Positions 34,029-52,224 of a DNA stretch of 64,000 nucleotides are shown here, in pieces. A program made the translations under genes and the position numbers. Source of the stretch: Selaginella moellendorffii. Its lineage: Eukaryota > Plantae > Lycopodiophyta. Position 1 is the first letter of the stretch, and each line of letters begins with the position of its first letter. The stretch spans positions 2,261,193-2,325,192 of the forward strand of contig NW_003314277.1 of the NCBI RefSeq assembly GCF_000143415.4, given 5' to 3'. A model generated the notes under the pieces. The model saw nothing but the letters and a program-made list of their open reading frames with translations. It was not told the origin of the DNA and ran no database searches.

Positions 34029-36463
34029 ATGGCGGGCGAGGAGGTATCAGCGGTGAGCCCTTCCCACGGCGATTCGAGCGATGGGAGAATGGCGCCTCAA
34101 GCTCAGGATCGAGCGGGGAGCTCGTCGGAAGCGGCGGCGGAGGGAGATAAGCCCTGGCATTCTTACGACACGGTGTTCTTGAATGCCAAAGCAGGTCTGG
34201 ATTTGTGGTTATTTTCCACATTCTTCCTATGTTTGTGTGTGTGCGTGAGTCAGGAATGAGTGGAGTGGACAAGGAAAAAGTCCAGAAGGTTGTTTACGAG
34301 ATGAGCAAAGGATCCCGGTATTTCGAGAACGAGCAGCGCAAAGAAGCAATTCTCCAGCAGAGGATCGAGAAATTCAGAGAACAGGCTGCAAAAATCAGCA
34401 CGACTAAGCTCGCAGAGACGAAAGCGGTGAGATTTCTTTGTTTTCATTTTTTTTTCTTTTCCTTTCTCTTCCAGCTCTAACAGAGATGTATAGGCGGTTG
34501 ATAGAGGAATTCTCGAGCTAGAGGCGAGCCGAAATCTCGACAAAACTTGGATGCATGTTGATATGGATGCGTTTTACGCCGCCGTCGAGACAGTGGAGGA
34601 TGTTTCCTTGTCTTGCAAGCCTATGGCTGTTGGAGGCATGTCGATGATTTGCACTGCAAACTATGAGGTATGCCGTTTGTTGCACGAAGAATTTCAGTGC
34701 TCACTTCTCCACCGCAGGCTCGGAAGTTTGGAGTGCGTGCTGCAATGCCTGGTTTCATAGCCTGCAAGCTGTGTCCGGACTTGGTATTGATAAAGCCAAA
34801 CTTTGAAAAATACACGCATTACAGTGAACTCACACGTCAAGGTACTACCATATTCCGCTTTTCTTTTGGAGGCTTAGTAAACCTTTCTGTTCCAGTCTTT
34901 CGCTTATATGACAAAAATTTTATTGCAAGGAGCCTGGACGAAGCGTATCTTGATATTACAGAGTTTTGTAGAACGGAAAGCATTGCTCCGGCAGAGGTAG
35001 TCTGGACGCAGTATTATGTGGTTTATCTCATGTGGTTTACAGGTAGCTGAACGGCTTCGGAAAGACGTTTTTGAGAAAACTAAGCTTACTTGCAGTGCTG
35101 GTGTTGCAGCCAACCGTCTCCTAGCGAAGGTGCTTTCATTCCTAATGCTTCTGACCATCTTTGCTTTTTGCTTTTATGTAGGTGTGTTCTGACATTAATA
35201 AACCAAATGGCCAATTTGTGCTTGAAAGTGATCGCGAAAAGATTATGGAATTTGTGTCGAAGCTGCCTATTCGGAAGGTTTTGAGTTCCTGATTCCAATT
35301 TTTTGTTTTAAAACCTGATATTTTTGTTTTCAAGGTTTCTGGTATTGGAAAGGTTACGGAGAGACTGTTGAAAGACGTTCTTTCTATCAATATGTGCTCT
35401 GATTTGATAGAAAATAGATATTTGATTTCGGCTTTGTTTTCAACAATTTCCACAGGTATCGTATGTCTCATTCGACGATGGTGACATTATTTCAGGTTTT
35501 TGCAGATTTTTTCTTATCAGTTGGCCTGGGTATTGGTGCCTCCGAGGCTCCTCACGAAGAGCAAAGAAAAAGCATAAGCAATGAAAGAACGTTTTCACCG
35601 ACAAGTGACGCGAACATTCTTGGCAAAATCTTAGGTTCGTTTTGCACAATTGAGTGTAAAATTTGTGATAACTTTCGCATATCAGGTGACCTCGCTGAAA
35701 GTTTGTCCGAGGACATGATCAAGGAAAATTTGCAAGGCCGGACATTAACGCTAAAACTTAAGACGAGCACATTTGAGGTGCGTTCTAGTCATAGAGTTTT
35801 GTATAATAGCAAATGTTTTCTCTGGCAGGTACGTAGTCGGGCCGTATCAGTTCAGCATTTTATTAGTTCTAAGAAAGAAATCGAATCACTTGCTATAAAA
35901 CTACTTAAAGCGGAACTTCCTATTTCATTGCGCTTGCTGGGTAAGTACTTTATCTTACCTTCCTCCATTGCTAACTCAAACACCGCAGGAGTGAGAGTTT
36001 CCCAGTTCAAAGAAGACGATCCTTCCCAGAAGAGTATTGCAAGCTTTCTGAAAGACATCTCTGATGCCGCTGTCAAGGATGACGACTTGGAACACGATTA
36101 CGATGAACAGACACCATATTTATCAGACACTGACCGCGATACAAGTTGTAAACATACGGCAGACCAGTGGACGCAAGATGATCGATGTTCCTTGTGTGGC
36201 GAGAGAATATCTTCCGAGTATCCAACCCTCAGACAAGAGCACGAGGACTTTCACTTTGCTTTAAAGATCCAACAACAGGACTCTGTTAACCAGCTTGAGG
36301 TTTCGAAAAGAAGCATTGGCAAGAGGTATGTCGATAACTTTTATTTTGATTGCAAACTGATGTGGTCCACATTCTCAGACCAATAACTCAAAGCAGCGAT
36401 CGTGGTACGAAGAAGTCCGCAAAGAATAGAAACTCCATCGAATCATACTTCGCAAAGAACTAG
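34029..36463 (+). CDS. POLK: DNA polymerase kappa (Y-family, DinB), multi-exon
   Basis: [90 protein letters not shown]; [15 protein letters not shown]; PIP-like NSIESYF. Confidence 0.95.
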
Positions 36464-37528
36464 CCGTGCGACAGGGTTTGGACAATCGTGTTATGCCAAG
36501 GATCAGAAACGTGCGTCAGCAAGTTGTCTATGGGGCCTGTTTTCGTGAAGAAAGCTTGAACAAAAACACCAAGTATTGCTACCATGGCCAGCCTTCCTGC
36601 AACTCACATCAGGATCGGTATGAACAGCAAACCTTACTACCGTTTTTGAGTTCCTTCTCTTTCAACGTTCGTGCGTTGTTTATGTCCCTTCCTAGGCCAG
36701 CGGGATCGAAAAACGGACCTCCGGGATAGCTGCATATGGTAAAAAAATCCATTTTTCTTTCCTCAGTCATATCCAATATTCGTTTTCTTTTGGCCAGGAA
36801 TATACCCGCTTTGTAGTCCAGCAAGAGCATCCTCAAACCCCAAAAACGTATCTTGAGCCGCTTGCGAACCAGGACTGATATAATCGTAGTATCTCCTCGT
36901 TTCAGCATACCTGCAAGGTAACACAAGTGGAAGTTTTACATCTCTGTCAAGGGCTCATAAGATTTCTCCCACCCCATTAGAATCAGCTGGACTACAAACA
37001 AAGTTCGCGTGTCTGCGAACTCGAATTCTGTGGCACCGGCCTCGTACCAGACAGGCAGGTCCCTGCCTCCCACAGTCCTTAAAAGCTTCAAAAGAGCCAA
37101 GGTATTGTTTCTATAGTTGATAGAAGAGAGTGACTTACATCTGTGACGAGGATTCCAGCAATGCCAGCCATAGCAAAACGAGAATGGACGAGTTCCGCTT
37201 GCACGTACCATCGAAGGGTTTCGGGGTCTTTACCGAGCTCGAGGGGATCAAATCCAAAGTCGCCTGCGAGACTGGATGGTCGATCGATAGCAAATTTGCC
37301 ACAAAGGAGTCACACGGCCGAGAAAGCAAAGATAAGAAATGGTTGGACTTACGAGCCATCAAGATGTTGGGGTGGAGATAAGCCAGGTAGCCAGATGGGC
37401 CTTTCGTCACTGCCAGAAGATTGAGCTCGAATTGACAAGAACCGAGCACAATGTGCGTTTCGAATTCGAGGATAGCAGCTTGACGGCTGTGGAGTCCTCC
37501 ATACCATTGAAAGCCGGTTGCTATCCAT
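36460..37528 (-). CDS. LHCA5: Photosystem I light-harvesting protein Lhca5, multi-exon
   Basis: [85 protein letters not shown]. Confidence 0.9.
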
Positions 37529-45165: not shown

Positions 45166-45172
45166 TATAAAA
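45166..45172 (+). promoter_or_regulatory. TATA box of the Hint-domain gene
   Basis: CTATAAAA ~70 bp upstream of ATG 45240; AATAAA at 46272 after the stop. Confidence 0.55.
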
Positions 45173-45239: not shown

Positions 45240-46257
45240 ATGGCTTATACCAATGCTCTAATCTTCCTGACTTCTTTCATTGCCTTTGCTGCAAGCATTG
45301 CAGTGGCACAAACTTCAGCCCCTCCCACTCCACCCCCTGCCTCCCCTCCCGCTCCAGCCACTCCTCCAGGCACTGCACCCCCTCCAGGCACTCCCCCTCC
45401 CACTCCAGCAGCTCCTCCTCCAGGCACTCGACCCCCTCCACCCCTTCCAAAGGCAGGATGCTTCCCAGGTAGGGTTCATGTGAATTCACTTTTTGTCTTA
45501 CAATTTTCAAGCTATTATAGGAGATGCAACTGTTCAGATGTATAATGGAGAAATTAAGTTCGTGAGGGAGCTTAATGTCGGAGACAAGGTTGAATACTTT
45601 CACATAAATTTACAAATCTTGTCCAAGTATAACTTTTCCACAGGTTGCAGTAGGCAAGAATATCTATTCAGATGTGTATGCATTCGGCCACAAGGATGCT
45701 GATGTCATCTCCAAGTTTTTCCAAGTGCATAGCGCTTCAAACATGTTGGAACTCACTGCAGGCCACTTTGTTCCCATTGCTGTCAATGGGAAGCTCGTGT
45801 ACAAGAGAGCCGAGGACCTCAAGGTTGGAGATTCCCTGTGGGAATCATCTAAAATCACTGGTAAGGAAAGCAAAAAGCATATATATTGGTGGGATGTTTC
45901 TAACAATTCTGCGCTACTTCTCCAGAAATCTCAAAGGTTGAGAAGCTAGGCCTCTACAACCCACTCACTCTCTCTGGCAGTATCATGGTGAACAATGTTC
46001 TAGCATCCACTCACAGCGAGTGGTTCTTAGACTCCATCTTTGATGCTGTCGGTGCAACCGAGTACCTGCCATACGCATACCAGGCCGTGCTTGCTCCAGT
46101 TCGCGCCATCTACAACATCGTGGGCAAGGAAATTTATGCAAAGGGCTATGCTGCCATCGATTCCTTCACCAACATTGCTGAGTTTGGAACGAAGTATGGA
46201 GGAAGCGTTGCTCTCGCCCTTGGAATTGCTGGTCTTGTGCTGGCCTCCAAGGTGTAA
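45240..46257 (+). CDS. Secreted Pro-rich (AGP/extensin-like) peptide fused to a Hedgehog-type Hint/Hog autoprocessing domain, 281 aa, 4 exons
   Basis: Exons 45240-45468, 45521-45588, 45644-45860 and 45926-46257 (GT-AG introns of 52, 55 and 65 bp) give one open frame: signal peptide; Pro/Ala/Thr repeats; AG|CFPGDATV..VRELNVGDKV..YSDVYAFGHKD..LELTAGH..RAEDLKVGD..GLYNPLTLSGSIMVNNVLASTHS..YQAVLAPVR; hydrophobic C-tail. Confidence 0.92.
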
Positions 46258-46901
46258 ACAATTTTGGCAAGAATAAAATTTGGAAATACATACAAACGTA
46301 CAGTGCACAGACAATTATTGGGTACCTCTCACACCACCAGTAGACCAAATGTCCACTACACCGCGTTTGTTTTGTTTTGCTAACATAACTAAAACACTAA
46401 AGTTGGCATTTTATAGACATTGGCCAATTTAAATAAATTTATTATGATATTCTTTGAATTTTAGGCATTTATAATGATTAAGGAAAATATTATCATTTTA
46501 TTATTATTACGGGGTTATAGGAGCTGGATAATGGTAATCTGCCCTAGCCTCACTCCACTTAATCAGTCTTCTCTTGAGTTCCAGTCCCGAAATTCCTCCT
46601 GAAATTCATAAACTTTTAGTGGCACTATCACTTAGTAGTATCAAAAGGATGTTGATTAATCTAGTGGGCCATTTGAAGCTATTAGGTTTAAAATATATGT
46701 TTTAATTTACTTCCACCTCCAGCACATATAGTATATTTAAAAACCAGATTTTTTAAAGAAAACTAAAATTGTTGTGCATCTTATTTAACTAAATATTATT
46801 TATTATTACTTATCTCCTATTTTAGTGTTATTCCTGTTTTGGTATATATTGTACTTTATATCTATAGTTCCTTCTATTTTTTTAATACTTGATTTAAGTA
46901 T

Positions 46902-49323: not shown

Positions 49324-52224
49324 ATGCAAGCCCCAGTGCAGCCGAGGAGCGGCCGCTTGGATTTCCTCAACGCCAAGCCGCCGCCCAACTATGTGGCCGG
49401 ATTGGGGCGCGGCGCCACCGGATTCACCACTCGATCCGACATCGGCCCCGCCAGGGCAGCGCCGGATCTCCCCGACAGGTCGGCCACCGCCATTGGCGGC
49501 GCTCCAGGGCCGGGCGGCGGCGCCGGGCGCGGCAGAGGCAAGGCGCCACCTCTTGGCGGAGGAGCGGCGGCAGCGGCGGCGGAAGACGACGACGACGATG
49601 CCGACGACAAGGGCTACGATGAGAACCAGAAATTCGATGAATTCGAGGGCAACGATGTGGGGCTCTTCGCGACGGGTGAGTATGACGAGGACGACAAGGA
49701 GGCCGACCAGATATGGGAGAGCGTGGACAAGAGGATGGATTCGCGGCGCAAGGACCGGCGGGAGGCGCGGCTCAAGCTGGTGATCGAGCAGTACCGAGCT
49801 TCCAATCCCAAGATCACGGAGCAGTTCGCGGACGTGAAGAGGACGCTGCTGGATCTTCCGGCGGAGGAGTGGGAAAACATCCCCGAGGTTGGCGACTACT
49901 CTTCCAGGAACAAGAAGAGGCGGTTTGAGAGCTTTGTGCCCGCGCCGGACACGCTGCTGGAAAAGGCTCGGCAGGAGAAGGAGCACGTCACTGCGCTGGA
50001 TCCTCGCAGCCGCGCCGCCGCTGGAGTTGGCGGCGCTGCTACTGCCGGCGGCGCGGAGACACCGTGGTCGCAGACGCCGGTGACGGATCTTACCGCGGTC
50101 GGGGAGGGGCGGGGGACTGTTCTGTCGCTCAAGCTGGATCGGCTGTCCGACTCGGTGAGTGGGCTCACGGTGGTGGATCCGAAAGGATACCTCACCGATC
50201 TCAAGAGTATGAAGATCACGAGCGACGCCGAGATCTCCGATATCAAGAAGGCGAGGTTGCTGCTCAAGTCGGTGATCCAGACCAATCCAAAGCATGCTCC
50301 CGGGTGGATCGCGGCCGCGCGGCTGGAAGAGGTGGCGGGGAAGATCGCTGCTGCGAGGAGTTTCATCCAGAAGGGATGCGAGGAGTGTCCCAAGAACGAG
50401 GACGTCTGGCTCGAGGCCTGCCGGCTGGCCAGCGGCGATGCGGCCAAAAAAGTGATCGCCATGGCGGTGAAGTCCATCCCGACGTCCGTGAAGCTGTGGA
50501 TGGCGGCTGCGCGGCTCGAGGTGGAAAACGCCGCCAAGAGCCGTGTTCTTCGCAAGGGACTCGAGTTTATACCCGACTCGGTCCGGCTGTGGAAGGCGGT
50601 GGTGGAGCTGGCGAACGAGGACGAAGCGAGGATCTTACTGGCTCGCGCTACCGAGTGCTGCCGTCTCCACGTCGAGCTCTGGCTAGCGCTTGCGCGGCTG
50701 GAAACTTACGACAAGGCGAGGGTGGTGCTCAACCGAGCTCGCGAGGCGCTGCCAACGGAGCCAACAATCTGGATCGCTGCGGCGAAGCTGGAGGAGGCAC
50801 AGGGGAACGTTTCGCGCGTGGAAGGCATCATCGACCGCGCGATACGATCTCTCCAGCGGGTCGGGGTGGTGATCGACCGCGAGTTTTGGATGAAGGAGGC
50901 GGAGGCGGCGGAGAGGGCCGGGTCGGCGGCGACGTGCGTGGCGATCGTGAGGAGCACCATCGGGATCGGTGTGGAGGAGGAGGACAAGAAGCGGACGTGG
51001 GTGGCGGACGCGGACGAGTGCCGGAAGCGGGGCTCGATCGAGACGGCGAGAGCTATCTACGCTCATGCTCTGGCTGCGTTTCCCGGGAAGAAGAGCATCT
51101 GGGTGAAGGCGGCGCAGCTTGAAAAGAGCCACGGAACGAGAGAATCGCTCGACTCGCTGCTGAAGCGAGCGGTGGGGTACTGTCCACAAGCGGAGGTCCT
51201 GTGGCTCATGGGAGCCAAGGAGAAGTGGCTAGCCGGGGACGTGGAGGGCGCTCGGGAGATCCTCACTGCCGCCTACGTCGCGATTCCAAACTCGGAGGAG
51301 ATATGGCTGGCGGCGTTCAAGCTCGAGTTTGAGAACCGGGAGCCGGAGAGAGCCAAGATCCTCCTGGCCAAGGCCAGGGACCGCGGATGCTCGGAGAGGG
51401 TGTGGATGAAGTCGGCGATCGTGGAACGAGAGCTGGGAAAGGTGGCGGAGGAGAGGAAGCTGCTCGAGGACGGGCTCAAGCTCTACCCGAGCTTCCACAA
51501 GCTGTGGCTGATGCTCGGCCAGCTCGAGGAGAGAGTTGGCAACTTTGAGGCGGCGAGGAGCGTGTACGAGAGAGCGCTGGAGAAATGCCCGGCTAGTACT
51601 CCGCTGTGGCTCTCGGCTGCGCAGCTGGAAGAGAAAGTCGGGGGGATCAGCAGGGCAAGAGCGATGCTGACGACGGCGAGGCTCAAGAACAGGGAGAACC
51701 CGGAGCTGTGGCTGGCGGCGATCCGGGCGGAGACGAGGGCCGGGAACTGGAAGGAGGCGGACGCGCTCATGGCGAAGGCGCTCCAGGAGTGCCGGCAGAG
51801 CGGGCTGCTGTGGGCCGCGAATGTGGAGATGGTGCCGCGGGCGCAGAGGAAGACCAAGAGCTTCGACGCGATCAAGAACAGCGAGCAGGATCCATACGTG
51901 ATCGCGGCGGTGGGGAAGTTTTTCTGGCAGGACAGGAAGGTGGAGAAGGCGAGGAACTGGATGAACAGGGCGGTGACGTTTGCTCCGGACGTGGGGGATT
52001 TCTGGGCGCTGCTGTACAAGTTTGAGCAGCAGCACGGGAGCGAGGCGCAGCTCCAGGAGGTGGTGGAGAGGTGCAAGGCGGCGGAGCCCAAGCACGGGGA
52101 GAGGTGGATCCGGGTGTCCAAGGCGGTGGAGAATGCGCACCAGACGACGGAGTTTATATTGAAGAAGGTGGTGGCGGGGTTTGGGAAGGACGAGGGGATT
52201 GTCATGACGGCTTGCAGGCCCTAG
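49324..52224 (+). CDS. STA1: Pre-mRNA splicing factor PRP6 (STABILIZED1), intronless; ORF is open from 49273
   Basis: FLNAKPPPNYVAGLGRGATGFTTRSDIGPAR, YDEDDKEADQIW, DPKGYLTDL, DIKKARLLLKSVIQTNPKHAPGWIAAARLEE, long HAT/TPR repeats, EPKHGERW. Confidence 0.97.
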   Translation: MQAPVQPRSGRLDFLNAKPPPNYVAGLGRGATGFTTRSDIGPARAAPDLPDRSATAIGGAPGPGGGAGRGRGKAPPLGGGAAAAAAEDDDDDADDKGYDENQKFDEFEGNDVGLFATGEYDEDDKEADQIWESVDKRMDSRRKDRREARLKLVIEQYRASNPKITEQFADVKRTLLDLPAEEWENIPEVGDYSSRNKKRRFESFVPAPDTLLEKARQEKEHVTALDPRSRAAAGVGGAATAGGAETPWSQTPVTDLTAVGEGRGTVLSLKLDRLSDSVSGLTVVDPKGYLTDLKSMKITSDAEISDIKKARLLLKSVIQTNPKHAPGWIAAARLEEVAGKIAAARSFIQKGCEECPKNEDVWLEACRLASGDAAKKVIAMAVKSIPTSVKLWMAAARLEVENAAKSRVLRKGLEFIPDSVRLWKAVVELANEDEARILLARATECCRLHVELWLALARLETYDKARVVLNRAREALPTEPTIWIAAAKLEEAQGNVSRVEGIIDRAIRSLQRVGVVIDREFWMKEAEAAERAGSAATCVAIVRSTIGIGVEEEDKKRTWVADADECRKRGSIETARAIYAHALAAFPGKKSIWVKAAQLEKSHGTRESLDSLLKRAVGYCPQAEVLWLMGAKEKWLAGDVEGAREILTAAYVAIPNSEEIWLAAFKLEFENREPERAKILLAKARDRGCSERVWMKSAIVERELGKVAEERKLLEDGLKLYPSFHKLWLMLGQLEERVGNFEAARSVYERALEKCPASTPLWLSAAQLEEKVGGISRARAMLTTARLKNRENPELWLAAIRAETRAGNWKEADALMAKALQECRQSGLLWAANVEMVPRAQRKTKSFDAIKNSEQDPYVIAAVGKFFWQDRKVEKARNWMNRAVTFAPDVGDFWALLYKFEQQHGSEAQLQEVVERCKAAEPKHGERWIRVSKAVENAHQTTEFILKKVVAGFGKDEGIVMTACRP

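What the first reader, a model, noticed from the sequence alone, without database searches (positions are those of the whole stretch)
45240..46257. Hedgehog-type self-processing (Hog) domain fused to an arabinogalactan/extensin-like peptide: candidate self-cleaving, self-anchoring plant cell-surface glycopeptide
Seen: three short GT-AG introns join four ORF fragments into an intact 281-aa frame, with a TATA box and AATAAA. The order is a ~23-aa signal peptide; a ~50-aa Pro/Ala/Thr/Ser peptide starting with Gln (QTSAPPTPPPASPPAPATPP...); Gly|Cys74-Phe-Pro-Gly; the two ELxVGD/DLKVGD pseudo-repeats; block-B TAGH; GLYNPLTLSGSIMVNNVLAS; an SRR-like LAPVR helix; and a hydrophobic tail. Established: in Hedgehog, this module performs an N-S acyl shift at G|C using TxxH and transfers the N-fragment to cholesterol. 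Classical AG peptides have the same signal + Q + PAST-rich layout but are anchored by GPI. Inference: here the Hog module may replace the GPI signal and release a Hyp-glycopeptide that is lipidated or ligated to another nucleophile. As I recall, Hog genes have been noted in comparative surveys of some non-seed plants and are absent from angiosperm models; I know of no functional characterisation of this fusion.
Basis: partly seen in the sequence, partly recalled or inferred. Interest (0 to 1): 0.92.

Follow-up and report, generated by a model that had tools for sequence, protein, structure and literature searches.

The report
Spikemoss Hedgehog-type self-cleaving protein, proline-rich cargo
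This is a real, intact and already annotated spikemoss (Selaginella moellendorffii) gene that joins a short proline-rich secreted peptide to a Hedgehog-type self-cleaving domain; the domain family was reported in this plant in 2008, and the idea that it puts a sterol anchor on a sugar-coated wall peptide is plausible but untested.

Summary
Four exons (45240-45468, 45521-45588, 45644-45860, 45926-46257) joined by three GT-AG introns of 52, 55 and 65 nt give a 281-aa protein. It is identical to SELMODRAFT_412024 (XP_002971175.1, UniProt D8RJT5) of Selaginella moellendorffii.

The protein scores 91 bits (E 1e-25) on Pfam Hint. Its predicted fold is closest to Drosophila Hedgehog-C (6TYY, 1AT0). 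The Gly73|Cys74 junction and TxxH (T137, H140) are conserved. The Hedgehog general-base Asp46 is replaced by His115, which is invariant in 47 relatives; the engineered D46H Hedgehog is reported to be active.

A helical region similar to the Hedgehog sterol-recognition region (SRR) and a C-terminal hydrophobic anchor follow.

The 49-50-aa cargo is 51% Pro and passes published compositional criteria for arabinogalactan proteins (AGPs). It is neither an extensin nor AG-peptide sized. Its DNA is an imperfect 18-nt tandem array whose length varies (28-69 aa) among three recent paralogs. That clade is nested inside nearly cargo-less Selaginella Hog genes.

The Hog domain is under purifying selection (dN/dS 0.23), and a spliced transcript contig exists.

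Bürglin (2008) published the plant Hog family; the Pro-rich variant was not found in the literature searched. Cleavage, sterol ligation and glycosylation remain inference. This scan flagged sibling Hog genes of this genome before.

The parts
45166..45172 (+). TATAAAA, 68 nt upstream of the ATG (possible TATA box)
   Evidence: Read directly from the sequence. The flank is AT-rich, so the evidence is weak.
45240..45308 (+). Exon 1, part 1: signal peptide, residues 1-23 (MAYTNALIFLTSFIAFAASIAVA, predicted cleavage AVA|Q)
   Evidence: Kyte-Doolittle peak at residues 4-24. AlphaFold predicts a helix at 2-25. The segment is conserved in paralogs. SignalP was not available.
45309..45458 (+). Exon 1, part 2: Pro-rich cargo Q24-G73 (51% Pro, 86% PAST over Q24-A72). 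The DNA is an imperfect 18-nt tandem array encoding PPPGT(P/A/R).
   Evidence: Composition. Tandem repeats. Predicted disordered, pLDDT 56-71. Cargo length is 28, 47, 49 or 69 aa in paralogs and haplotypes.
45459..45461 (+). Codon of Cys74, the Hint position-1 nucleophile; the scissile bond is Gly73|Cys74
   Evidence: Aligned to Cys1 of 1AT0 and 6TYY. Invariant in 49 of 49 relatives.
45469..45520 (+). Intron 1 (52 nt, GT..AG)
   Evidence: Gene model. An intron lies at the same place in paralogs. There is no direct read support for this copy.
45521..45588 (+). Exon 2: start of the Hint domain (DATVQMYNGEIKFVRELNVGDK)
   Evidence: Matches Pfam Hint profile positions 17-38.
45589..45643 (+). Intron 2 (55 nt, GT..AG)
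   Evidence: Gene model. A loose end in run X5 at 45642 carries the end of exon 2.
45644..45860 (+). Exon 3: middle of the Hint domain. It holds His115 (45689-45691, at the Hedgehog Asp46/D303 position) and T137-A-G-H140 (45755-45766, block B TxxH).
   Evidence: Residue mapping from the alignment. His115 is conserved in 47 of 47 relatives, T/S137 in 48 and H140 in 48.
45861..45925 (+). Intron 3 (65 nt, GT..AG)
   Evidence: Removed exactly in a 333-nt contig of run X1 with no mismatches, and in run X5 (tables 5 and 8).
45926..46026 (+). Exon 4, part 1: end of the Hint domain (GLYNPLTLSGSIMVNNVLAS-T200-HSEW). Thr200 sits where Hedgehog has Cys143.
   Evidence: This piece alone scores 32.3 bits on Pfam Hint. 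Alignment. Position 200 varies (A/S/C/T/V) among relatives.
46027..46170 (+). Exon 4, part 2: helical extension similar to the sterol- or adduct-recognition region (SRR/ARR), residues about 206-253. It includes LPxxYQ..LAPVR (Bürglin's motif K).
   Evidence: Helices at 207-253 with pLDDT about 90. P229 and R231 are invariant. There is a weak alignment to SHH residues 338-394.
46195..46248 (+). Exon 4, part 3: C-terminal hydrophobic segment (about 262-279, SVALALGIAGLVLAS) followed by KV and the stop codon at 46255-46257
   Evidence: Kyte-Doolittle peak. Relatives have an apolar run followed by basic residues. A transmembrane anchor and a GPI signal could not be told apart here.
46272..46277 (+). 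AATAAA, 15 nt after the stop codon
   Evidence: Read directly from the sequence. No read data cover the 3' end.

Best explanation
The gene encodes a secretory-pathway precursor of Selaginella moellendorffii with four parts: a signal peptide; a disordered 50-residue Pro/Thr/Ala-rich cargo that starts with Gln; a Hedgehog-type Hog module (Hint domain 74-205 plus a helical extension 206-253); and a C-terminal hydrophobic anchor.

Shown here: the gene model, partial splicing evidence, family membership, fold, conserved catalytic residues, purifying selection on the Hog part, and the repeat nature and recent origin of the cargo.

Inferred mechanism: in the ER the Hint domain, held at the membrane by its tail, converts the Gly73-Cys74 peptide bond into a thioester, with help from T137 and H140. 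A nucleophile then resolves the thioester and frees the cargo. By analogy with Hedgehog, the nucleophile is most likely the 3-hydroxyl of a membrane sterol, activated by His115, which occupies the Hedgehog Asp46 general-base position. The Pro-rich peptide would then leave with a C-terminal sterol ester. It would be prolyl-hydroxylated and O-glycosylated in the Golgi and sit at the outer face of the plasma membrane.

My odds: self-cleavage at G73|C74 about 0.75; a sterol or other lipid adduct rather than plain hydrolysis about 0.35; Hyp-O-glycosylation of the cargo about 0.5. The stated confidence of 0.55 refers to the core reading, a functional self-cleaving Hog precursor that releases a Pro-rich peptide.
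For: The spliced model is identical to the annotated protein P0151.

Family membership and fold: Pfam Hint 91 bits, E 1e-25. phmmer hits SHH at 4.9e-11 and Drosophila HhC at 8.9e-9 (6TYY) and 1.8e-7 (1AT0), with C74 aligned to Cys1, H115 to D46, and T137/H140 to TxxH. The AlphaFold model has pLDDT above 95 over the Hint domain, and its best PDB matches are 6TYY (TM 0.82) and 1AT0 (0.80), ahead of BIL domains and inteins.

Conservation in 49 relatives: C74 49/49, H115 47/47, T/S137 48, H140 48, P229 and R231 49/49.

The review PMC9163320 reports that the D303H (D46H) Hedgehog keeps structure and cholesterolysis activity and accepts more sterols.

Selection and expression: dN/dS is 0.23 for the Hog part between paralogs, and alleles are intact on both haplotype scaffolds. 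A spliced, mismatch-free contig exists.

The cargo passes published AGP composition thresholds (criteria from PMC5266747). Relatives carry an apolar C-terminal run followed by basic residues.
Against: No biochemical data exist for any plant Hog in the library searched.

The sister and next-nearest Hog genes have almost no cargo (TNTTG or TNTNNS before Cys). The cargo is an unstable 18-nt array that differs by 19 residues between near-identical Hog copies. The cargo sequence may therefore matter little.

The second Hedgehog cysteine (C143, branched intermediate) is Thr here and varies in relatives.

The SRR similarity is weak, 13.9 bits for that stretch.

Most prolines are contiguous and there is no SP3-5 motif, so the type of glycosylation cannot be read from the sequence.

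Expression appears low: about 2 near-perfect reads in 12% of two RNA-seq runs.
Confidence: 0.55

Rival explanations
1. Self-cleaving pro-domain only. The Hog module cuts at G73|C74 and water (or a thiol) resolves the thioester. A soluble, possibly Hyp-glycosylated, Pro-rich peptide is released into the apoplast with no lipid, while the Hog domain stays in the membrane.
For: The thioester-forming residues are conserved. Spontaneous hydrolytic autoprocessing is reported even for vertebrate SHhC constructs (PMC13738340). The SRR similarity is weak. The C143 equivalent is absent.
Against: His115 at the general-base position is invariant in 47 of 47 relatives, and the helical extension with the invariant P229/R231 motif is conserved. 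That conservation is hard to explain if no second substrate is activated. The D46H Hedgehog is sterol-competent.
Confidence: 0.25
2. The function lies in the membrane-anchored Hog domain, or in the act of cleavage. The Pro-rich stretch is a recently expanded, loosely constrained low-complexity spacer (minisatellite slippage) with no AGP-like role.
For: The Pro-rich clade is nested within cargo-less Selaginella Hogs (support 99/98 and 87/88). The cargo DNA is an imperfect 18-nt tandem array. Cargo lengths are 28, 47, 49 and 69 aa, while the Hog domains are 95% identical to this protein for the two paralogs scored and dS is about 0.11. Run X5 shows a 48-nt repeat-number variant. No Pro-rich cargo appears among the other relatives examined.
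Against: All three loci and both haplotypes keep a Pro/Thr/Ala/Gly-only composition that starts with Gln and ends in Gly|Cys. The frame must be kept anyway to express the Hog domain, so this argument is weak. A secreted stretch with 51% Pro in a plant would almost certainly be a prolyl-hydroxylase substrate (established knowledge, not tested here).
Confidence: 0.15
3. Non-functional relic: a decaying extra copy of the Selaginella Hog family.
For: Decayed copies do exist in this genome (P0163 and P0164; earlier scan note s1-382088). Read support in two RNA-seq runs is low.
Against: The 281-aa frame is intact on both haplotype scaffolds, with 1 synonymous and 1 non-synonymous difference in the Hog part. 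dN/dS is 0.23 against a paralog. All catalytic residues are intact. A spliced contig has no mismatches.
Confidence: 0.03

Closest known systems
Plant and red-algal Hog proteins of Bürglin 2008 (pSm Hog, pSl Hog, pPp Hog; BMC Genomics 9:127, PMC2362128)
   Same: Same species and same Hog family. Both have a signal peptide, motifs J and K, and the motif-J cysteine replaced by Ser/Thr (Thr200 here).
   Different: The published plant sequences share a 'conserved upstream region'. The Cys-containing cargos seen here in P0157 and P0004 are the likely counterpart. This gene instead carries a Pro-rich repeat cargo, which I did not find described. The paper's text does not discuss the His at the Asp46 position or the C-terminal anchor.
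Metazoan Hedgehog C-terminal autoprocessing domain (HhC; PDB 1AT0, D46H mutant 6TYY)
   Same: The G|CF junction, TxxH, the Hint fold (TM 0.80-0.82) and a C-terminal extension after the Hint domain.
   Different: About 27% identity. The general base is His115 instead of Asp46. Thr replaces Cys143. There is a C-terminal hydrophobic anchor. The cargo is a disordered Pro-rich peptide rather than the folded Hedge signalling domain. The adduct is unknown.
Choanoflagellate Hoglet and nematode XC Thog (Hog proteins with Thr-rich low-complexity cargo), as discussed in PMC2362128
   Same: A low-complexity, probably O-glycosylated, slippage-derived stretch sits in front of a Hog domain.
   Different: These belong to different lineages and arose independently. 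Their cargo is Thr-rich rather than Pro-rich, and no link to plant Hyp glycosylation applies.
Classical and chimeric arabinogalactan proteins (AGPs)
   Same: A signal peptide followed by a PAST-rich region dense in AP/SP/TP glycomodules. The cargo passes the Finding-AGP thresholds.
   Different: No GPI signal follows the PAST region. Contiguous PPP runs dominate. The cargo is too long for an AG peptide. There is no homology to any AGP, only shared composition. Glycosylation is untested.
Cargo-less Selaginella Hog paralogs (P0153, P0154/P0155; 'warthog protein 6' in RefSeq)
   Same: 76-88% identical Hog domains, a related signal peptide in P0153 and a closely similar C-terminal tail.
   Different: They have only 5-6 residues (TNTTG or TNTNNS) between the signal peptide and Cys. 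This gene has 50.

Membership tests
Hedgehog-type Hog domain (Pfam PF01079 Hint module plus C-terminal SRR/ARR) | Profile match above the curated cut-off | tested here: met
   91 bits, E 1e-25, cut-off 29.7, residues 71-203. The exon pieces hit colinearly.
Hedgehog-type Hog domain (Pfam PF01079 Hint module plus C-terminal SRR/ARR) | Gly|Cys-Phe junction with the nucleophilic Cys at Hint position 1 | tested here: met
   G73|C74-F75-P76 aligns to Cys1 of 1AT0 and 6TYY. Cys and Phe are invariant in 49 relatives.
Hedgehog-type Hog domain (Pfam PF01079 Hint module plus C-terminal SRR/ARR) | Block B TxxH | tested here: met
   T137-A-G-H140. T/S is present in 48 and H in 48 of 49 relatives.
Hedgehog-type Hog domain (Pfam PF01079 Hint module plus C-terminal SRR/ARR) | Asp at Hint position 46 (D303), the general base that activates the sterol hydroxyl | tested here: not met
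   The residue is His115, invariant in 47 of 47 relatives. The engineered D303H Hedgehog is reported active with wider sterol tolerance (PMC9163320). The chemistry may therefore be kept with a different residue.
Hedgehog-type Hog domain (Pfam PF01079 Hint module plus C-terminal SRR/ARR) | Second conserved Cys (C143 in the SCYA motif) | tested here: not met
   The residue is Thr200, and the position varies (A/S/C/T/V) in relatives. This agrees with Bürglin's remark on motif J.
Hedgehog-type Hog domain (Pfam PF01079 Hint module plus C-terminal SRR/ARR) | Hint fold closest to HhC rather than to inteins or BIL domains | tested here: met
   Foldseek top hits are 6TYY (E 2e-10, TM 0.82) and 1AT0 (TM 0.80). 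BIL2 and inteins score at E 1e-6 or weaker.
Hedgehog-type Hog domain (Pfam PF01079 Hint module plus C-terminal SRR/ARR) | C-terminal sterol- or adduct-recognition region after the Hint domain | tested here: inconclusive
   A conserved helical region at 206-253 with an LAPxR motif is present. Its similarity to the SHH SRR is weak (13.9 bits), and no solved SRR structure is available for comparison.
Hedgehog-type Hog domain (Pfam PF01079 Hint module plus C-terminal SRR/ARR) | Autocatalytic cleavage with transfer of the N-fragment to a sterol | not testable with these tools
   This needs biochemistry. No report on any plant Hog was found.
Arabinogalactan proteins (classical, AG-peptide or chimeric) | N-terminal signal peptide | tested here: met
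   A hydrophobic h-region at residues 4-24 and AVA|Q. This is a heuristic only; SignalP was not available.
Arabinogalactan proteins (classical, AG-peptide or chimeric) | AGP-like region with at least 3-5 glycomodules, GlycoIndex at least 0.15-0.20 and PAST at least 55-60% (Finding-AGP, PMC5266747) | tested here: met
   Residues 27-59 hold 15 glycomodules in 33 aa, GlycoIndex 0.45, PAST 94% (criteria).
Arabinogalactan proteins (classical, AG-peptide or chimeric) | C-terminal GPI signal directly after the PAST region (classical AGPs and AG peptides) | tested here: not met
   The Hog domain follows the PAST region. The only hydrophobic tail lies 190 residues further on and belongs to the Hog module in all relatives.
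Arabinogalactan proteins (classical, AG-peptide or chimeric) | AG-peptide size (mature backbone 10-15 aa, precursor 55-90 aa) | tested here: not met
   The cargo is 49-50 aa and the precursor 281 aa (size definition).
Arabinogalactan proteins (classical, AG-peptide or chimeric) | Hyp-linked type II arabinogalactan and Yariv reactivity | not testable with these tools
   This needs glycan analysis.
Extensins | Repeated Ser-Pro3-5 motifs (and Tyr cross-link motifs) | tested here: not met
   There is no SP3-5, one SPP and no YxY. The definition is from the abstract of PMC4769139.
Inteins and bacterial intein-like domains | C-terminal His-Asn plus a downstream nucleophile for splicing or C-terminal cleavage | tested here: not met
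   The Hint domain ends in VLASTHSEWFLD with no HN[CST] and runs on into the helical extension (sequence). Structural hits to inteins are weaker than those to HhC.

The most novel reading that the evidence does not exclude
The Hog module esterifies a phytosterol to Gly73 of a Hyp-O-glycosylated Pro-rich peptide. This would give land plants a second, GPI-independent lipid anchor for cell-surface glycopeptides. It would also show that the whole His-type non-metazoan Hog clade carries out sterol ligation with a natural Asp-to-His general-base swap.
Probability: 0.15. Interest if true: 0.85.

Novelty: new variant of a known kind. Interest (0 to 1): 0.42.

Why it matters
No Hog protein outside animals has a known adduct or biological role in the literature I could search. 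Selaginella offers a compact natural series on nearly the same Hog scaffold: Cys-peptide cargo, almost no cargo, and Pro-rich cargo. This makes the question 'what does a plant Hog attach to what?' directly testable.

The invariant His at the Hedgehog general-base position is a natural counterpart of the engineered D46H enzyme, which tolerates more sterols. That would fit organisms whose membranes hold several phytosterols.

If sterol ligation occurs, it would be a new kind of lipid anchor for plant surface glycopeptides. If it does not, the gene is one more lineage-specific member of a family known since 2008.

Tried and rejected
1. The full spliced protein could not be given by reference. I searched the exons separately and recovered the identical database protein P0151, which was used from then on.
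2. The first homolog search with the whole P0001 was swamped by Pro-rich words (8000 candidates, 18 hits). It was repeated on the Hog part alone.
3. The look-up of encoding contigs found no record for P0152. The older model P0167 gave the locus instead.
4. The two raw RNA-seq runs gave only about 10 reads each, mostly 90-95% alike and therefore from paralogs. Expression level, transcript ends and intron 1 could not be established.
5. Literature searches for the gene's accessions, for 'Selaginella warthog', for plant Hog plus sterol or AGP, and the supplements of the AGP survey PMC5266747 returned nothing on this gene or on Pro-rich Hogs.
6. Extensin reading rejected: no SP3-5.
7. Intein/BIL reading rejected: no C-terminal HN, weaker structural matches.
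8. Pseudogene reading rejected: dN/dS 0.23 and intact alleles.
9. GPI signal versus transmembrane anchor for the tail could not be decided, because no predictor was available. Longer basic tails in moss relatives favour a transmembrane anchor for the family.
Full report
**What is there**

The plus strand between 45240 and 46257 holds four coding pieces. Joining 45240-45468, 45521-45588, 45644-45860 and 45926-46257 removes three GT..AG introns of 52, 55 and 65 nt and gives an open frame of 281 codons plus a stop. The window is identical over 21 kb to scaffold GL377581.1 of the Selaginella moellendorffii assembly GCA_000143415.2, gene at 2,306,432-2,307,449.

The spliced product equals, residue for residue, the public protein SELMODRAFT_412024 = EFJ27773.1 = XP_002971175.1 = UniProt D8RJT5. 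It is named 'Hint domain-containing protein' or 'warthog protein 6'.

**Transcript evidence**

A 333-nt contig of run X1 lies on 45831-45859 and 45925-46228 with no mismatch and skips exactly the 65-nt intron 3. Run X5 shows the same joint, and a loose end there carries the end of exon 2 in front of exon 3. A spliced contig implies RNA.

Two raw RNA-seq runs, each read to about 12%, gave only about ten reads apiece. Most were 90-95% alike and so come from paralogs. Expression in those samples is low, and intron 1 has no direct support for this copy. Intron 1 is supported indirectly: an allele and two paralogs share the same four-exon structure.

**The Hog module**

- The separate exons hit Pfam Hint (PF01079) colinearly. 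The whole protein scores 91 bits, E 1e-25, against a cut-off of 29.7.
- phmmer against PDB sequences finds human SHH (4.9e-11) and Drosophila Hedgehog-C (6TYY 8.9e-9, 1AT0 1.8e-7). The alignments place Cys74 on Hint position 1, Thr137 and His140 on the TxxH motif, Thr200 on Cys143, and His115 on Asp46/D303.
- An AlphaFold model built on a 34-sequence alignment (A1) has pLDDT above 95 across residues 74-205. Confident helices span 207-253, a terminal helix spans 255-280, and the cargo is disordered.
- Foldseek ranks 6TYY (TM 0.82) and 1AT0 (TM 0.80) first, ahead of BIL domains and inteins.
- In 49 relatives that retain the junction, Cys74 is invariant, His115 is present in all 47 with a residue there, T/S137 and His140 occur in 48, and P229 and R231 are invariant. 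Position 200 varies.

The first chemical step of Hedgehog processing is thus fully provided for. The residue that Hedgehog uses to activate cholesterol is systematically His in this clade. The review PMC9163320 reports that the engineered D303H Hedgehog keeps its structure (this is entry 6TYY) and its cholesterolysis activity, and that it accepts additional sterols. This makes sterol chemistry possible here but does not show it.

**The tail**

The last 20 or so residues form an apolar run followed by Lys-Val. Moss and other relatives have a comparable run followed by several basic residues. The tail is therefore part of the Hog module, not of the cargo. For the family it reads best as a membrane anchor. 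In the short Selaginella form a GPI signal cannot be excluded, and no predictor was available.

**The cargo**

- Residues 24-72 are 51% Pro and 86% Pro+Ala+Ser+Thr, with nine [AST]P dipeptides.
- Under the published Finding-AGP criteria (PMC5266747), residues 27-59 hold 15 glycomodules in 33 residues, giving GlycoIndex 0.45 and PAST 94%. This passes the thresholds for a non-classical or chimeric AGP candidate.
- There is no Ser-Pro3-5 and no Tyr motif, so it is not an extensin. At 49-50 residues it is not an AG peptide. Most prolines are in PPP runs.
- The resemblance to AGPs is compositional only.

**Origin of the cargo**

The DNA of the cargo is an imperfect 18-nt tandem array encoding PPPGT(P/A/R). 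S. moellendorffii has three such loci on this scaffold, each with counterparts on the second haplotype scaffold:

| Locus | Position relative to this gene | Proteins | Cargo length |
|---|---|---|---|
| This gene | – | P0151 / P0166 | 49 aa |
| Second locus | about 70 kb downstream, opposite strand | P0152 / P0168 | 69 or 49 aa |
| Third locus | about 400 kb upstream | P0171, and P0001 on the other scaffold | 28 and 47 aa |

The Hog parts of P0001 and P0152 are 95% identical to this protein. For this gene against the 400-kb paralog, dS is about 0.11 and dN/dS is 0.23.

A maximum-likelihood tree of Hog domains makes the Pro-rich genes a clade (support 99/98). Its sister is a gene with only TNTTG between the signal peptide and Cys (87/88). 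Next come two more nearly cargo-less genes, then genes with a four-Cys cargo, with moss sequences outside (midpoint root).

Among the other relatives examined, none has a Pro-rich cargo. The Pro-rich cargo is therefore a recent, Selaginella-specific and length-unstable addition to an almost cargo-less Hog gene. It is not an old AGP that exchanged its GPI signal.

**Most likely mechanism**

The precursor enters the ER and loses its signal peptide after AVA. The tail holds it at the membrane. The Hint domain forms a Gly73-Cys74 thioester, and a nucleophile releases the Pro-rich peptide.

I put self-cleavage at about 0.75. The reasons are that all required residues are conserved under purifying selection and that the fold is that of HhC.

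I put a sterol or other lipid adduct at about 0.35. In favour are the invariant His at the base position, the conserved helical extension and the membrane tether. Against are the weak SRR similarity, the missing second Cys and the absence of any experimental precedent outside animals.

Hydroxylation and O-glycosylation of a secreted plant stretch with 51% Pro are likely (about 0.5 for substantial glycosylation), but the glycan type cannot be read from the sequence.

**Rivals**

- Hydrolytic release of a soluble peptide (0.25).
- A functionally indifferent low-complexity spacer in a gene whose role lies in the Hog domain (0.15).
- A relic (0.03); the selection and allele data argue against it.

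**Comparison with what is known**

Bürglin (2008, PMC2362128) reported Hog genes in S. moellendorffii, S. lepidophylla and Physcomitrella, noted a conserved upstream region and the replaced motif-J cysteine, and found none in Arabidopsis and other higher plants. The same paper notes Thr-rich, slippage-derived cargos in choanoflagellate Hoglet and a nematode Hog.

I found no paper that names this gene, describes a Pro-rich plant Hog, or tests any plant Hog. Bürglin's text does not discuss the His at position 46 or the tail.

Earlier notes of this scan had already flagged the same stretch, the paralog 70 kb away and several sibling Hog genes of this genome. Follow-ups on three siblings judged them members of the family published in 2008. 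My results agree and add the cargo's origin.

**Verdict**

This is a new cargo variant of a known protein kind, in an already annotated gene. Interest is moderate. The sterol-anchored glycopeptide idea is testable and would be notable if true, but the young, unstable cargo and the cargo-less sisters lower its prior.

Noticed in passing
window 45923-45962 (reads of runs X1, X21, X22, X5): A 6253-nt contig in run X1 (depth about 123) and many raw RNA reads share only these 40 nt. They continue with sequence encoding GLYNPLTLSGDILVN. This points to an abundant long transcript carrying a related Hint motif that matches none of the proteins fetched here.
   Followed up: partly
window 45273-45308, and 45352-45399 (run X5, organism B): X5 holds a transcript in which the signal peptide is followed directly by ..TNTTGCFPGD, the cargo-less type. 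A separate contig 'goes back 48 nt' inside the Pro-rich array, which indicates a repeat-number variant.
   Followed up: partly
GL377581.1 1,907,362-1,908,317 (L003) and about 2,376,962-2,379,413 (L002, opposite strand); GL377566.1 (L004): Two further Pro-rich Hog loci lie on the same scaffold, with allelic copies on the second haplotype scaffold. RefSeq lists a 301-aa and a 281-aa isoform for the 70-kb neighbour that differ by 20 residues inside the repeat. This may be a modelling artefact within the tandem array.
   Followed up: partly
alignment A1 / 49 relatives: Besides the known motifs, the non-metazoan clade has a near-invariant A-S-x-H-S-(E/D)-W-(F)-L-D block (H201, S202, W204, D207) directly after the Hint domain. 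Its role is unknown.
   Followed up: no
window 35240-37528 and 49324-52224: The neighbouring called genes are a Y-family DNA polymerase (IMS domains), a chlorophyll a/b-binding protein on the minus strand that overlaps its end, and a PRP1/PRP6-like splicing factor. The last lies in a stretch of 64% G+C, much higher than the rest of the window. Between them lies AT-rich DNA (32% G+C at 38-42 kb).
   Followed up: no
P0008 (Ceratodon purpureus KC19_11G148500): A moss Hog carries a long Cys-rich cargo with weak, sub-threshold similarity to STIG1 and CPL1-like domains. This is another example of cargo turnover in plant Hogs.
   Followed up: no
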